A program made the translations under genes and the position numbers. The notes below the pieces were generated by a model. It was not told the origin of the DNA. It did no database searches and worked only from the letters and a program-made list of their open reading frames with translations. Shown here one piece after another: positions 9,391 through 59,324 of a DNA stretch of 64,000 nt. The DNA lies in the NCBI RefSeq assembly GCF_001194135.2, contig NC_068985.1:64008147-64072146 (forward strand), read 5' to 3'. This stretch comes from Octopus bimaculoides. Lineage: Eukaryota. How positions within the stretch are numbered: position 1 is the stretch's first letter; every line of letters starts with the position of its first letter.

Positions 9391-9410
9391 ACTTACCTGA
9401 AATTAAAGAA
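9391..9410 (-). other. Candidate recursive splice site (ratchet point) TTCTTTAATTTCAG|GTAAGT
   Basis: Plus strand acttacctgaaattaaagaa. The 3' splice site abuts a perfect 5' splice site; junction 9397/9396; sense to SBF; not inside a recognisable repeat. Confidence 0.65.
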
Positions 9411-10278
9411 CACTGTATTTACACAAGTACAACATGAGTCATATACAGACATTTTGTATTTAAAAATTAGTAACACTTTTAACATGTTACCTATATCTTT
9501 ATACCCAAGATTTCTTGCCATATACACAAGTATATACAGTAAACAGTACATAAGAATGCTTTTTGCTGAACTGTACCTACTAAACATCTTTACATCTTAA
9601 ACTGAAGCATTCTCCTGGATAACTGAATCTTCAACATTCTCACCAATGCACATTCCTCTGTTAAACCAGGTAAACATAGCTCTGAGCTAAAACCTCAAAA
9701 TACCATAAAAATATGTACTGAACCCACATTGTATAATCTCTTTGCCCATCAGATGTTCTCAAACATCAACTAATGAGCAACTGGAATCATCTAATGATGG
9801 TGATGATACTAACAGACAAAAACCATCAAAAACACAAATATTCAAAGAAAGTAAGTAAATGGAATTTTAAAAGATCTAACCTAATTTATGAAGAGTTGAT
9901 TTCAACAAATTCTTGCTAAACCATCCCACCCACCAAACATGCACACTTTTGCCTTTAAAATTTTATAGTAATCAATGGTGACTCATCCTCCTATCAAATG
10001 TTACAGATTTAACACTTAGTGGTGTTCAGCTGTTTAAAAGGAGTTTTACTATTTATAAAGGAAAGGCAGCAGGAAATGGTATGTATACTTTTTAATACTA
10101 AGATTACATATCCCAAATCCTCACAGGAGTTTGGTGAACATAAAAATGTTAGTCACTATAGCACTGGCATTTAAAATTTTAAATAGATTACTAAGTTTTC
10201 TGAGAATATATATATACACATATATATGATACAAGAGAGAATCACTGAAAGTGTAACTAAACATACATAATAATAGTA

Positions 10279-11504
10279 TTGGGTTGGCAACCAAGTTCCC
10301 GCGGTCTTTTTTAAATTTAAATTTTAAAAAAAGTTTAATAAAAATAACAACTAATTAATCAATAATGTATTCACCCTTGTTGTTTACAACTTCTTCCCAA
10401 CGTTCAACAAGATCTTTAATACTCGTTGGTAGAAATCACCCGATTTCGTCTCGAAAAATTGATCCAAACAAGCTCTCAATTCTGCATCAGTATTGAACAA
10501 AACTCTGCGCATAGCATTTGAAAGAGATCGAAAGAGGTGGAAATCCGTTGGTGCCAAATCAGGAGAGTACGGCGGGTGTGGCAGCACTTGCCAGCTATGT
10601 GTTTGGATGGCTTCCTTGGTTATATTGGCAATATGAAGGTGGGCGTTGTCGTGTAGCAGAACTCCATGCTGCCGATTAGGTCTTTTCTCTTGAATAGCCA
10701 TGTTGAGATGTTCCATCTGTTGAACATAGAGTTCCGCATTGACCGGTTGGTTCCATTCAAGCAATTCATAATGGATAATCCCTTCCCAGTCCCACCATAC
10801 GCACAAAGATCTTGTTTCATGTGCGGTGTTGCCTGTTTACTGGGGGCTAAGCCATTCCTTACGCTGCTTCATATTGATGTACAAGCACCATTTTTCATCA
10901 CCAGTAATGATTCAGTAAAGAAATCGTTGCTTGTGTCCATGAGTTGAGCAGTGACAAGCAAGCAAACTAGTGGAGTTTGTGGCTCGTTGATTTTTGTTGT
11001 TGTCACTTAAAGCATGCAGAACCCATGCTCCACGCTTCTGAACCTTTCCCATCTATTGAAGATGCTTCTCTATAGCAGCATGGGAGCATTCCATTTTCTC
11101 TGCCAGTTCCCTTGTCGTTTGACGAGAATTTTCATACAAAAGTTGGTTTAATTGCTCTTCATTGAACTCAACTGGACAGCCAAAACGAGGTGTGTCTTTG
11201 AGGTCAAAATTTCCATTTTTGAACTCGGCATACCAATCACAAGTAGCTCTTTCAGCTATGGCACCCTCTCCATACACAGCACAAATGTCGTGAGCAGCTT
11301 TTGCGGCCTTAGAACCTTGATTAAAAACAAAACGAAAAAGGTGTCAAAAATGCCCGTTTTTCTTAACTTGGCATTCCATTTTAATGATCTGAAAATAAAC
11401 AAAAATTAACTAAAATTAACTAGAAAAAAAAATAGATTCCAAAATTTAAAAACGCAATAAATTCCAAATTTTAAAAAATGGCGGGAACTTAGTTGCCAAC
11501 CCAA
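10279..11504 (-). mobile_element. Mariner DNA transposon (DD34D), decayed
   Basis: 24-bp TIRs ttgggttggcaa(c/t)caagttcccgc-type with 1 mismatch, flanked by TA on both sides. ORF remnants W...FKNGNFDLKD.PR.G.P, CVWWD.EGIIHYELL, HDNA-(34 aa)-D with HPPYSPDLAPTDFHLF. Confidence 0.93.
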
Positions 11505-11980
11505 TATAATGTCACTGAAAACTAGTAGTAACAGAAAAGATATAAAACTGGTTTAGTGAATCAGGTATAAACTTAGGGCTTTGAATTTATACATTAATGG
11601 AAACATTTTATTGCATTTTGGAACAAAATAATAAAACTATTTTAGTTTACATCAACAGAGAATAGGTAGTATCTATATCAGTTGTGAAAAGAATTTATTT
11701 ATAAAAGACCAGCAGATTATCCAGGACATAAGTTGTCTTCATTTGCTTAACACTACATGAGTTAAACAAAATACACACACACAAATGCATATATATTTGT
11801 GTGTGTGTGTGTGTGTATTTATATACACACATGCATACAAATACATATACACACACACACATATGTATGCATTCATGTACATTTATACATACACACACAC
11901 ACACACACACACACACATACATTCATGGACATTTATATACACACAGGCATGTGTGTATGTATGAATGTATGTACGTATGT

Positions 11981-12294
11981 CTTTCACCCTTTGATTGCTC
12001 TTATTTTGTCCTGCAGGGTGTCCAACAATCACCCTCTTCACGAAGCAAGCTTGATGGAGTTGCCAGTTTAGTCGCCAACAGCCTGACCATGCAACAGGTT
12101 GTATTGAGTTACATGCTACCAGTGGTATGACAGATCGCTCTTGGGTACTACAGGTAACATGTAACCCAGTACAACCTGTTGCATGGTCGGGATGTCAGCA
12201 ACTAAACTGGCAACCCCATCAAGCTTACCTGGTGAGGAGAGTGATTGTTGGACACCCTGCAGGACGAAAAATAAGACCTATCAAAGGGTAGAAG
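11981..12294. repeat. Imperfect foldback, ~140-bp arms with ~32-nt loop
   Basis: 11981-12120 is reverse-complementary to 12153-12294 (e.g. gtcctgcagggtgtccaacaatcac / gtgattgttggacaccctgcaggac), with scattered mismatches. Confidence 0.85.
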
Positions 12295-12580
12295 AGATCA
12301 TGAGTAGTCAATGGCCATCCAACAATATGTATATACATGCATGGGGACGTGGAAAAACCTGGGTTCGTGTCCAGATGTACAGTTGATCTACTGGGTGTTG
12401 GAGGCCCCTCTGTTGTCACATCTCTCTAGGAGAGGGAAACACTGAGAGAAAACCTGCGGCACTGACAATATTTGATAATGTAGACTAGTTCTTTTTGAAT
12501 TTATGTTGTCCAGGTTCACAGAGTGGGGCTGGATTTGTGCAAATCCTTTCCCCACTATAAAAAAAAAATCATCATGCACA

Positions 12581-57148: not shown

Positions 57149-57636
57149 TATATACACACACACACACACACACACACACACACACACACACACACACACA
57201 CACACATATATATATTATACAGACACGTACATAGATATATGCAACACAATGGCCTAGAACAAATTGCCTAGGAAATATCACTATCTCTAATAGGACATTC
57301 CCTTATCTCTATCTTCTATGACACAAGCTGCAGATTGATGCAACACAATTAGATGTACAAAATCCTACTCATAACAGATAGTTGCACGATGGGTTGAAAC
57401 AATAGTCGTACTGAATGAAGACTTGTGCTAAATCTATCTTCCGTTTCCTTCATCATTATTACATGTACATACCTATAGATATACATGGAAACAGTTTTGA
57501 GTTGGTGACAGGAAAGGCATCCAGTCACAGAAACAGCCTCAGTAAACACTGGAAACATGGAAAACTGGACATTAAAGAATGATGATGACAATCATCATCA
57601 TTGAAAGTCTACTTTCCAACCTGGCATGGGTCGGAC

Positions 57637-57770
57637 GTGTGTGTGTGTGTGTGTGTGTGTGTGTGTGTGTGTGTGTGTGTGTGTGTGTGTGTGTGTGTGT
57701 GTGTGTGTGTGTGTGTGTGTGTGTGTGTGTGTGTGTGTGTGTGTGTGTGCGCGCGCACACACACACACAC
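57637..57770. repeat. Long (TG)n-(CG)-(CA)n microsatellite
   Basis: Direct reading. Confidence 0.95.
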
Positions 57771-57899
57771 TTGCCCCCCCATACCTACTATTACCCCCAA
57801 CTTCAGAACAGATGTCAATATGTTTATATTCGAGTAACTTAGCAGTTTGACAAAAAGAGAATTGAGTACATGCACGCATAACTGAGGACGTGTGTATAT

Positions 57900-59050
57900 G
57901 TATACTTTTTTTTTTATATAGTGGTATAAATACAATTAAGATTAAAAAGGATAACACAAGAACAGTGTTTGACAAATCATGTATTAGGTTACTGCTGTAA
58001 CGAAAATCGAAAACAACGTTTCATACGTTAGTCCTTCATCAGAAGAAATAAGCACAGAAACATTAAAAAGAAATATAGTGAAGAAAAATAACCAAACGTT
58101 TAGAAGCCAGGTGGGAAGTGAGTAGCTACAAAGGGAGAAAAGTCGAATGTGTAGATGCAAATATGAGGGGAAGCAGCCATAAGAGGTGGTGTTAGTGTCA
58201 TGTATATACGTATTGAGATGTGAGATGTGCAAAAGCGTTGTTGGTGCCTGCATGTAACCATTAGGCAGATGGTGTGAAAACGTGTATATGAGGAGGTGGG
58301 GGCGGATGGATATAGNNNNNNNNNNNNNNNNNNNNNNNNNNNNNNNNNNNNNNNNNNNNNNNNNNNNNNNNNNNNNNNNNNNNNNNNNNNNNNNNNNNNN
58401 NNNNNNNNNNNNNNNNNNNNNNNNNNNNNNNNNNNNNNNNNNNNNNNNNNNNNNNNNNNNNNNNNNNNNAGGCAGATGGTGTGAAAACGTGTATATGAGG
58501 AGGTGGGGGCGGATGGATATAGGAATTAGATGAAGGGCATAGAATGGCAAGAGCAATGTGGTGTTATCTTGATGTGTGGAGTGCGCAAGTGTATAATAAA
58601 AGTACGTTCGGGGTGTATATACATATTCTCATGTATATATATATATATATATATATACATATATGGTATACACGATTTATTCACATACACACATTTCTAA
58701 GAACTGCTGGAGTAGGTTTCAAAAAAGTACAATATCAGACATTGGTAGAATTTTGTGTGAAGTTTCGGCCTTATAAGTGGAGTGTTAGTGTAGTCAGAAT
58801 TGTTGTGTTTCCTGTAGAGTTACAGTTGAGTATCAACTGTTAGTGTTGTGTAAGGAGTGTGTAGTATTGAGTGGAGTGCGAGGTGTACTATGTGAAATGT
58901 GCATGGAGTGGCCTGTAAGTAGTGTTATATGTGTATGTAGTATTGTATGTTGCTTGTTATATGGGTGAAGTGGTGTTATAGATCGTGAATTATTTGTAGA
59001 ATAGTCTATAAAAAGTATATACGGAATGTTTTATGTGAAAGTCTGTATCA
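57900..59050 (-). mobile_element. Possible 3'-terminal remnant of a Penelope-like element
   Basis: Pyrimidine/CA-rich minus strand similar in style to 47700-48480, ending in a decayed CTGATGA...GAAACGTT motif at 58042-58015. No coding remnant seen. Confidence 0.35.
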
Positions 59051-59324
59051 GGGATGGTGTTATTATTTGAAATTACCGTTCTTTAATTTGTACGTAATTA
59101 ATGTTGTATCCTTATCAGCTCACACAAAAAGTATATTAGAATTTTTTTAAACATTTTATCCAAGAGACATCGAGAAAAGAAGAGGGGGAATTGACCGCGC
59201 ATACACACNNNNNNNNNNATAACACATACACATTTTTTGACAAGGACTTTCGGGATATGGAAATCCTTTTCTAATGAGTATATTTCGGTCTTTGAGTAAT
59301 GTAGTGGAGATAAGAAATACTCAC

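What the first reader, a model, noticed from the sequence alone, without database searches (positions are those of the whole stretch)
9391..59324. Candidate recursive-splicing (ratchet) system subdividing a giant octopod SBF intron
Seen in sequence: the exact 12-mer TTTCAG|GTAAGT occurs twice on the gene's sense strand in non-repeat intronic DNA (39235/39234 and 9397/9396). It cuts the intron into about 20.1 kb, 29.8 kb and more than 9.4 kb. Joining exon 1 to either site regenerates AAC|GTAAGT, at least as strong as the native AAC|GTGAGT. My rough estimate (about 65% AT, independent bases) is about 1e-7 per position, or about 0.007 expected in 59 kb, so two hits are unlikely by chance. I saw no equivalent on the antisense strand; the nearest is the weaker TTTTTTTTTAG|GTAATT at 39421-39437. 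Established: zero-length AG|GT ratchet points remove long Drosophila introns stepwise, and RS-exons do so in long vertebrate neural genes. Inference: cephalopods, with TE-inflated introns, use the same strategy; I am not aware of this being reported.
Basis: partly seen in the sequence, partly recalled or inferred. Interest (0 to 1): 0.85.

Follow-up and report, generated by a model that had tools for sequence, protein, structure and literature searches.

The report
Recursive splice site in octopus intron
One of the two flagged AG|GTAAGT sites (39234) is really spliced to exon 1 in RNA from two related species and marks a sharp step in intron coverage, so it is probably the first recursive-splicing "ratchet point" seen in a cephalopod. 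The second site (9396) shows no sign of use.

Summary
TTTCAG|GTAAGT occurs exactly twice, both on the gene's sense (−) strand, in unique and unrelated intronic DNA.

**Site 39234 is supported by public RNA data.**
- Contigs from three runs (X1, X3, and X44 from a sister species about 5% diverged) join the last 29 nt of exon 1 precisely to G39234 and run on unspliced for 1.1–1.8 kb. A fourth run from another study (X7) has a contig with the same layout, but its 29 unlaid letters were not printed.
- RNA coverage is 0–2 just upstream of the site and 8–17 just downstream. It stays at 5–8 for 31 kb in two runs.
- The 5' end of the intron is also covered, which gives a coarse saw-tooth.
- The joined product meets a stop after two codons. 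It is absent from polyA-type raw reads that do cover exon 1.

This meets the junction, motif, saw-tooth and cross-species criteria used for Drosophila ratchet points. The second step, re-splicing from the regenerated AAC|GTAAGT, is inferred and not shown.

**Site 9396 is not supported.** Contigs of three runs read straight through it at equal depth, and none joins it to exon 1.

**Verdict.** This is a real, probably recursive, splice site: a new member of a known kind in a new phylum. It is not the three-segment system that was proposed. The main rival is a truncated non-coding isoform ending near 31.1 kb.

The parts
59325..59560 (-). Exon 1. The coding part is 59379-59325 (MSRLADYFVVVGYDHEKE plus 1 nt, phase 1). 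The 5'UTR extends at least to about 59440 in polyA-type reads and to 59560-59801 in some contigs.
   Evidence: Sequence. Read depth and contigs.
59319..59324 (-). Native 5' splice site GTGAGT of the long first intron (AAC|GTGAGT).
   Evidence: All spliced contigs and reads break at 59325|59324.
39235..59324 (-). Intron segment 1, nominally 20,090 nt with 1,477 N in six gaps. It is removed by splicing exon 1 to 39234. RNA coverage is about 8 at its 5' end and 0-2 at its 3' end.
39235..39256 (-). Polypyrimidine tract and 3' splice site of the ratchet point (attatttttgtttttctttcag), with TT at -5/-6.
   Evidence: TT at -5/-6 is found in 196 of 197 fly ratchet points.
39229..39240 (-). Supported ratchet point TTTCAG|GTAAGT. 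Exon 1 is joined to G39234, regenerating AAC|GTAAGT.
   Evidence: Junction contigs with the exon-1 letters printed in X1 and X3 (seen from the exon-1 side in X3) and in X44 of another species. X7 has a contig with the same layout, but its 29 unlaid letters were not printed.
1..39234 (-). Intron segment 2, which runs off the window. It is covered by unspliced sense-strand RNA at depth about 5-8 in X1 and X3 over 31 kb.
   Evidence: Exon 2 is not in the window.
9391..9402 (-). Second TTTCAG|GTAAGT. No evidence of use; probably a chance or silent match.
   Evidence: Read-through contigs at equal depth on both sides in X7, X3 and X1, with no junction. The 12-mer is unchanged in two related genomes, but at about 4% background divergence that says little.
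31920..31931 (-). Third sense-strand motif of the same class, TCTTAG|GTGAGT. Read through by an X7 contig, so no evidence of use.
   Evidence: X7 contig 31867-32727.
31059..31074 (-). Genomically encoded A16 tract (AATAAGTCTTC-A16) just past assembly gap 31094-31129. X7 coverage drops from about 13 to about 2 here. This is either a possible intronic polyadenylation site or an oligo-dT internal-priming site.

Best explanation
The site at 39235|39234 is a recursive splice site of the zero-length 'ratchet point' type in the first intron (over 59 kb) of a DENN/SBF-like gene on the - strand.

Step 1 (shown): once the strong 3' splice site (tttttgtttttctttcag) is transcribed, exon 1 is spliced to G39234 and the first ~20 kb of intron is removed. 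This happens in nearly all transcripts, because almost no RNA covers the last few hundred bases before the site while the RNA just after it is abundant.

Step 2 (inferred): the junction recreates a consensus donor, AAC|GTAAGT. That donor is then spliced to exon 2, which lies outside the window, or to a further ratchet point. The mRNA therefore carries only exon 1 joined to exon 2.

The identical 12-mer at 9396 is not a working ratchet point in the samples available.
For: 1. Junction. Contigs join the last 29 nt of exon 1 (CGTTGTTGGATATGATCACGAAAAAGAAC) directly to GTAAGTAACCCTGC... at 39234 and continue unspliced.
- X3: 1,103 nt, depth 7.6. X1: 1,128 nt, depth 8.3.
- X7, from a different study: 1,554 nt, depth 16.8, with the same layout of 29 unlaid nt at the site end.
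- A k=31 graph cannot join these two places without reads that span the junction.

2. Use in another species. X44, an RNA run of another species, has a 1,798-nt contig about 95% identical to the window, with the same exon-1 sequence joined at the same base.

3. Coverage step.
- Depth is 0 in X1, X3, X44 and X47 and 0-2 in X7 at 39249-39700, against 8-17 below 39234.
- Share of sampled words held downstream (38136-39234): 1.00, 1.00, 0.98, 0.80 and 0.77 in X7, X1, X3, X36 and X37. Upstream (39241-40117): 0.37, 0.15, 0.16, 0.14, and X37 not listed. A floor of about 0.14 is shared by nearly all the RNA runs listed.
- The 5' end of segment 1 is covered at 8.06 in X1. That gives a coarse saw-tooth.

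4. The downstream RNA is intron, not exon. Coverage continues at 5-8 for 31 kb in X1 and X3.

5. It is RNA of the sense strand, not DNA. There is no coverage upstream of the site, and one contig carries 11 clustered changes that read A>G on the - strand.

6. It is not a mature mRNA.
- The junction gives CGT AAG TAA, a stop after two codons (sequence).
- The polyA-type raw runs X21 and X22 laid 0 and 1 reads on 38000-39700, while exon 1 collected 22, 30 and 13 reads in X21, X22 and X23.

7. Motif. The site has a strong pyrimidine tract, TT at -5/-6, CAG|GTAAGT, and lies in an intron over 11 kb long. All match fly ratchet points.

8. Logic for step 2. If nearly every transcript that reaches beyond 39234 has already lost segment 1, the abundant exon 1-exon 2 mRNA must come from re-splicing.
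Against: - The second step was not observed. There are no lariat reads and no raw total-RNA reads. Contig depth is a flat, poor measure.
- In X1 and X3 the profile over 31 kb is nearly flat rather than visibly declining. That fits a very distant exon 2, but it also fits a stable RNA that keeps the rest of the intron.
- In X7 depth falls from about 13 to about 2 near 31.1 kb, next to an A16 tract and an assembly gap. In the other species depth is 0 at 9250-9550. Part of the joined RNA could therefore be a truncated, polyadenylated isoform.
- No plausible downstream donor for a cryptic RS-exon lies within 400 nt, by a rough scoring matrix.
- Conservation was tested only at about 5% divergence.
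- Site 9396 shows no step and no junction.
Confidence: 0.65

Rival explanations
1. Site 39234 is the ordinary 3' splice site of an unannotated, non-coding alternative last exon. Exon 1 is spliced to it and the transcript ends by intronic cleavage and polyadenylation about 8 kb downstream, near 31.1 kb. The GTAAGT at its start is never used as a donor.
For: - X7 depth is 10-17 from 39234 to 31130, then 0.3-4.5 below 30043 and about 4 at 8200-9900.
- An AATAAG...A16 element tail sits just past the gap at 31059-31085.
- The other-species run X44 has depth 13.4 at the site but 0 at 9250-9550.
- The joined RNA is about as abundant as a fifth of the mRNA contig (7.6 against 37.6 in X3).
Against: - X1 and X3 show no drop at 31.1 kb. 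Coverage stays at 5-8 down to 8200.
- The polyA-type raw runs tested at the site laid 0 reads (X21) and 1 read (X22) on 38000-39700, although exon 1 is covered.
- The A16 tract is encoded in the genome, so the X7 step may be oligo-dT internal priming on the intermediate.
- The product encodes only 20 residues.
- A perfect GTAAGT placed exactly at the acceptor is what a ratchet point needs and what an exon start does not.
Confidence: 0.2
2. It is a vertebrate-style RS-exon or poison cassette exon. An exon starting at 39234 is first defined with a downstream donor. It is then either skipped through the regenerated donor or included to give a degraded transcript.
For: In flies and vertebrates, ratchet points are reported to be recognised through short cryptic exons of about 50 nt with a downstream donor. 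The reading frame meets a stop at once, as in poison exons.
Against: - No GT with a rough donor score above 4 lies within 400 nt downstream of 39234.
- Contigs run 1.1-1.8 kb past the site without a splice, and no loose end marks a downstream donor.
Confidence: 0.1
3. Both 12-mers are chance matches with no role in splicing.
For: The motif was picked after the fact. Counts of AGGTRAGT are small, 4 on the sense strand against 1 on the antisense. Site 9396 shows no sign of use.
Against: This is refuted for 39234 by junction contigs read in three runs from two species, with a fourth run (from another study) showing the same layout, and by the coverage step. It remains the best reading for 9396 alone.
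Confidence: 0.03

Closest known systems
Drosophila zero-nucleotide ratchet points (Hatton 1998; Burnette 2005; Duff 2015)
   Same: - Juxtaposed (Y)n TT-CAG|GTAAGT on the sense strand of an intron over 11 kb long.
- The upstream exon is joined to the site in non-polyA RNA.
- Saw-tooth step in coverage at the site.
- The removed segment is about 20 kb; the fly mean is 18 kb.
- The site is invisible in mRNA.
- Use is conserved in a sister species.
   Different: - The host is a mollusc, where the searchable literature reports nothing of this kind.
- Lariat and RT-PCR proof of the second step is lacking.
- No cryptic downstream donor was found.
- Only one site in this intron is supported.
Vertebrate recursive splicing through RS-exons (Sibley 2015; Blazquez 2018)
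   Same: It lies in a long first intron of a long gene. The regenerated 5' splice site follows an in-frame stop, so inclusion would be non-productive.
   Different: Vertebrate sites are defined by a downstream donor that competes with the regenerated one. No such donor or included exon is seen here.
Computationally predicted RP-site enrichment in invertebrate long introns (Shepard et al. 2009, PMC2773006)
   Same: Motifs of this class lie on the sense strand and not the antisense strand: 3 against 0 for YYYYAGGTRAGT in this window.
   Different: That study covered insects and a sea urchin, with no mollusc, and used no RNA evidence. One window cannot establish a genome-wide enrichment.
Intronic polyadenylation with a composite terminal exon
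   Same: An intronic 3' splice site is joined to exon 1 and followed by kilobases of unspliced RNA. One run shows a drop in depth near an A-rich element tail.
   Different: The RNA is absent from polyA-type raw reads. Two runs show no drop. The exact GTAAGT at the acceptor is not explained.

Membership tests
Zero-length recursive splice site (ratchet point) | [quoted passage not shown] | tested here: met
   Both sites read TTTCAG|GTAAGT. Pyrimidine fraction over -22..-3 is 0.75 at 39234 and 0.55 at 9396.
Zero-length recursive splice site (ratchet point) | TT at positions -5 and -6 (196 of 197 fly ratchet points) | tested here: met
   Both sites read T(-6) T(-5) T(-4) C A G.
Zero-length recursive splice site (ratchet point) | Lies in a long intron (fly range 11-133 kb) with no annotated exon at the site | tested here: inconclusive
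   The intron is over 59 kb. No annotation was available to check for an annotated exon.
Zero-length recursive splice site (ratchet point) | RNA junctions from the upstream exon's 5' splice site to the AG|GT (site 39234) | tested here: met
   Contigs in X1, X3 and X44 carry exon 1 joined at 39234. X7 shows the same layout, with 29 unlaid nt at the site end.
Zero-length recursive splice site (ratchet point) | RNA junctions from the upstream exon's 5' splice site to the AG|GT (site 9396) | tested here: not met
   Contigs of X7, X3 and X1 cross the site and none has an exon-1 loose end. Contigs can drop rare variants, so low-level use is not excluded.
Zero-length recursive splice site (ratchet point) | Saw-tooth: intron RNA density lowest just upstream of the site and stepping up at it | tested here: met
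   At 39234, depth goes from 0-2 upstream to 8-17 downstream in X1, X3, X7 and X44. The 5' end of the intron is at 8.06 in X1. The measure is coarse because contig depth is flat per contig. There is no step at 9396.
Zero-length recursive splice site (ratchet point) | The regenerated donor is used in a second step (lariat with its 5' end at the ratchet point, or genetic proof) | not testable with these tools
   The runs that hold intron RNA are kept only as contigs. The raw-read runs tested at the site (X21, X22) hold almost no intron reads there.
Zero-length recursive splice site (ratchet point) | Not present in mature mRNA | tested here: met
   X21 and X22 laid 0 and 1 reads on 38000-39700, against 22, 30 and 13 reads on exon 1 in X21-23. 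The joined frame stops after 2 codons.
Zero-length recursive splice site (ratchet point) | Sequence and use conserved in related species | tested here: inconclusive
   Use at the same base is seen in one species about 5% diverged. More distant cephalopods could not be reached. The 9396 12-mer is unchanged in two related genomes, but background divergence is only about 4%.
Zero-length recursive splice site (ratchet point) | Short cryptic RS-exon with a downstream donor (exon-definition model, Joseph 2018) | tested here: not met
   No GT with a rough donor score above 4 lies within 400 nt of 39234. The matrix is my own approximation, so this is a weak test.
Alternative terminal exon / intronic polyadenylation isoform | Defined 3' end with a polyadenylation signal, and presence in polyA+ RNA | tested here: inconclusive
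   X7 depth drops near 31.1 kb beside an AATAAG-A16 tail and an assembly gap. There is no drop in X1 or X3 and no reads in polyA-type runs.

The most novel reading that the evidence does not exclude
Zero-length recursive splicing operates in a cephalopod mollusc. A constitutive ratchet point at 39234, used in at least two octopus-like species, removes the first ~20 kb of a long SBF-like first intron before the rest. That would extend ratchet-point splicing, so far shown with RNA evidence in flies and vertebrates, to Spiralia. It would imply that the mechanism is ancestral to bilaterians or recurs wherever introns become very long.
Probability: 0.6. Interest if true: 0.6.

Novelty: new member of a known kind. 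Interest (0 to 1): 0.55.

Why it matters
- **Where it has been shown.** Recursive splicing has RNA-level evidence in Drosophila and vertebrates. Motif statistics alone predict it in other insects and a sea urchin.
- **What this adds.** Cephalopod genes have very long, transposon-filled introns, and how these are spliced accurately is unexplored. A ratchet point used in two species would be the first RNA-level case in a mollusc.
- **What it enables.** It gives a concrete motif, TTTCAG|GTAAGT with TT at -5/-6, and a method: junction contigs plus coverage steps in public total-RNA data. Together these allow a genome-wide survey.
- **Practical use.** Such sites explain apparent 'novel exons' that begin with GTAAGT in transcript assemblies, and they matter for gene annotation.
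- **Limits.** It is not a new mechanism. One of the two proposed sites failed, so claims of an organised multi-site system should be held back.

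Tried and rejected
1. Joint detection between exon 1 and 39234 in one read-laying run. The two anchors are 20.1 kb apart, more than the 20 kb limit, so I used loose ends from each side instead.
2. Laying reads on 44001-64000.
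3. Laying reads on 39241-57630 for the segment-1 profile. The middle of segment 1 therefore has no depth profile.
4. The first exon-1 call was swamped by simple-repeat reads. I repeated it on a 342-nt stretch.
5. Gene identity.
   - Pfam and PDB searches with the 29-residue exon 1 + exon 2 peptide found nothing.
   - 'SBF' therefore rests on memory of the human SBF2 N-terminus.
6. A broad literature query on molluscs and saw-tooth returned only irrelevant papers.
7. Cryptic RS-exon donor search: nothing near 39234.
8. The idea that the two sites belong to one repeat family is rejected.
9. The idea that the intron contigs are DNA contamination is rejected. There is no coverage just upstream of 39234, and one contig carries a cluster of changes that read A>G on the - strand.
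10. The third motif at 31925 was considered as a ratchet point and rejected, because an X7 contig reads through it.

Full report
**1. The observation**

TTTCAGGTAAGT occurs exactly twice in the 64-kb window, at 9391-9402 and 39229-39240, both on the − strand. Exon 1 of a − strand gene ends AAC|GTGAGT at 59325|59324. Its reading frame starts at 59379 and reads MSRLADYFVVVGYDHEKE. From memory, that resembles the N-terminus of human SBF2/MTMR13. Tools could not confirm the name.

- Dinucleotide-preserving shuffles give a mean of 0.04 for both strands, and none of 100 reached two hits.
- The 12-mer was chosen after the fact, so I also counted the looser class YYYYAGGTRAGT. It has three hits, all on the sense strand, against 0.36 expected on both strands; 1 of 100 shuffles reached three.
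- AGGTRAGT is 4 on the sense strand against 1 on the antisense strand.

The two flanks are unique in the window and unrelated to each other. Both lie at single-copy depth in a related genome.

The nominal segments are 20,090 nt (1,477 N), 29,838 nt (36 N) and at least 9,396 nt.
- No assembly gap touches either site or the exon-1 donor.
- I saw no contig bridging any gap, so the lengths are estimates.
- Exon 2, read from spliced contigs as GGAGTGGAGTCAGCTGTGGCAAAACC..., is not in the window.

**2. Site 39234 in RNA**

Public runs of the same organism and of two close relatives were found.

Seen from the exon-1 side, X3 has three contigs that share the end of exon 1.
- Two go to other sequence. 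One loose end was printed and reads as exon 2.
- One contig of 1,103 nt (depth 7.6) goes to ...ACCCTGCTTTTTACTCCTAACTCTGGATAT, the sequence that follows GTAAGTA downstream of 39234.

Seen from the site itself:
- X1 (1,128 nt, depth 8.3) and X3 end exactly at 39234 with a 29-nt loose end, GTTCTTTTTCGTGATCATATCCAACAACG. That is the reverse complement of the end of exon 1.
- X7, from another study, has a 1,554-nt contig (depth 16.8) with the same layout.
- X44, an RNA run of another species, has a 1,798-nt contig about 95% identical to the window, with the same exon-1 tail at the same base.

A de Bruijn contig can hold such a junction only if reads span it.

Coverage steps at the site.
- Depth is 0 (X1, X3, X44, X47) or 0-2 (X7) at 39249-39700, and 8-17 below 39234.
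- The index tells the same story in five runs. Shares of sampled words downstream are 1.00, 1.00, 0.98, 0.80 and 0.77. Upstream they are 0.37, 0.15, 0.16 and 0.14, with the fifth run not listed, over a floor of about 0.14 that nearly all the RNA runs listed share.
- The 5' end of the intron is covered at 8.06 in X1. Segment 1 is therefore present at its start and gone at its end, which is a coarse saw-tooth.

Below the site, unique contigs of X1 and X3 continue at depth 5-8 for 31 kb. This is intron RNA and not a discrete exon.

It is RNA and not DNA. There is no upstream coverage, and one X3 contig carries 11 clustered T>C changes on the + strand. These read A>G on the sense strand, the pattern of ADAR hyper-editing.

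The joined frame reads CGT AAG TAA, a stop after two codons. The polyA-type raw runs X21 and X22 laid 0 and 1 reads on 38000-39700. Exon 1 collected 22, 30 and 13 reads in X21, X22 and X23.

**3. Site 9396 in RNA**

- Contigs of X7 (8961-9900), X3 (8884-9586) and X1 (9339-9900) cross the site at the same depth on both sides, and none has an exon-1 loose end.
- RNA of the other species does not cover this place at all.
- The 12-mer is unchanged in two related genomes. At about 4% background divergence that outcome has roughly even odds by chance.
- Contigs can lose rare variants, so low-level use is not excluded. There is no saw-tooth step, so it is not a constitutive ratchet point.

**4. Mechanism**

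Shown: exon 1 is spliced to 39234 in nearly all transcripts that extend past it. This regenerates AAC|GTAAGT.

Inferred: that donor is then spliced onward. The argument is that abundant exon 1-exon 2 mRNA exists, while almost no transcript keeps segment 1 once segment 2 has been made. The mRNA must therefore come from transcripts that already used 39234.

The motif (pyrimidine tract, TT at -5/-6, CAG|GTAAGT), the 20-kb segment size, the junction, the saw-tooth and the use in a second species match the criteria of Duff et al.. The lariat proof is missing. I found no downstream donor for a cryptic RS-exon, although my scoring matrix is rough.

**5. Rivals**

The main rival is a truncated non-coding isoform.
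- In its favour: X7 depth falls from about 13 to about 2 near 31.1 kb, beside a genomic AATAAG...A16 tail and an assembly gap. X44 has no coverage 30 kb further on.
- That pattern may reflect intronic polyadenylation, or oligo-dT internal priming on the intermediate.
- Against it: X1 and X3 show no drop, and the polyA-type runs lack the RNA.

Confidences are 0.65 for recursive splicing, 0.2 for the terminal-exon reading, about 0.1 for a vertebrate-type RS-exon, and 0.03 for pure chance. Chance is now limited to site 9396.

**6. Comparison and novelty**

This works like a Drosophila ratchet point and meets most membership tests. The second-step test could not be run.

- No paper in the searchable library combines 'recursive splicing' with 'octopus'. 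One mentions cephalopods in passing.
- Shepard et al. predicted RP-site enrichment in insects and a sea urchin, with no mollusc.

It is therefore a new member of a known kind in a new phylum, not a new mechanism.

**7. Verdict**

One site is real and probably recursive. The other is unsupported, so there is no evidence for a multi-site system. Interest is 0.55.

Noticed in passing
window 26214-26299 (X3 contig laid on 25694-26407): Eleven clustered T>C differences on the + strand, which read A>G on the sense - strand, in one RNA contig and in no other run. This looks like ADAR hyper-editing of intronic pre-mRNA.
   Followed up: no
window 31059-31129: X7 unique-contig depth is 10-17 from 39234 down to 31130 and only 0.3-4.5 below 30043. 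The break coincides with assembly gap 31094-31129 and a genomic AATAAGTCTTC-A16 element tail. It may be intronic polyadenylation or oligo-dT internal priming. X1 and X3 show no break.
   Followed up: partly
window 31920-31931, - strand: A third sense-strand motif of the ratchet class, TCTTAG|GTGAGT. An X7 contig (31867-32727) reads through it.
   Followed up: partly
window 2599-2612, + strand: The only antisense AG|GTAAGT in the window (caattatag|GTAAGTCG).
   Followed up: no
whole window: Donor-like hexamers are about twice as frequent on the sense strand: GTRAGT 35 against 18, GTAAGT 20 against 9. TTTCAG (37 against 35) and AGGT (227 against 219) are balanced. The cause is unknown; transposon orientation or composition are possibilities.
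   Followed up: no
window 59377-59384, - strand: Two overlapping start codons, ATGTCATG. The first opens a different frame (MSCLVWLTTSSLLDMITKKN...). The second gives the DENN/SBF-like MSRLADYF....
   Followed up: no
window 59488-59590: A 35-nt unit repeated about 3.2 times (CTACTGCACTATTACTGCTACTACCAGGGGTT) just upstream of the main read pile of exon 1, in the 5'UTR or promoter region.
   Followed up: no
window 27896-28432, 31118-31654, 33803-34876, 36488-37024: Short stretches with RNA contig depth in the thousands to tens of thousands in every run. These are highly expressed or very high-copy repeat elements inside the intron, with many chimeric 'joints' between copies.
   Followed up: no
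window 38400-38640: Two short high-copy pieces (about 38401-38460 and 38585-38641), at depth 2,000-12,000 in a related genome run, sit inside the otherwise single-copy kilobase downstream of the ratchet point.
   Followed up: no
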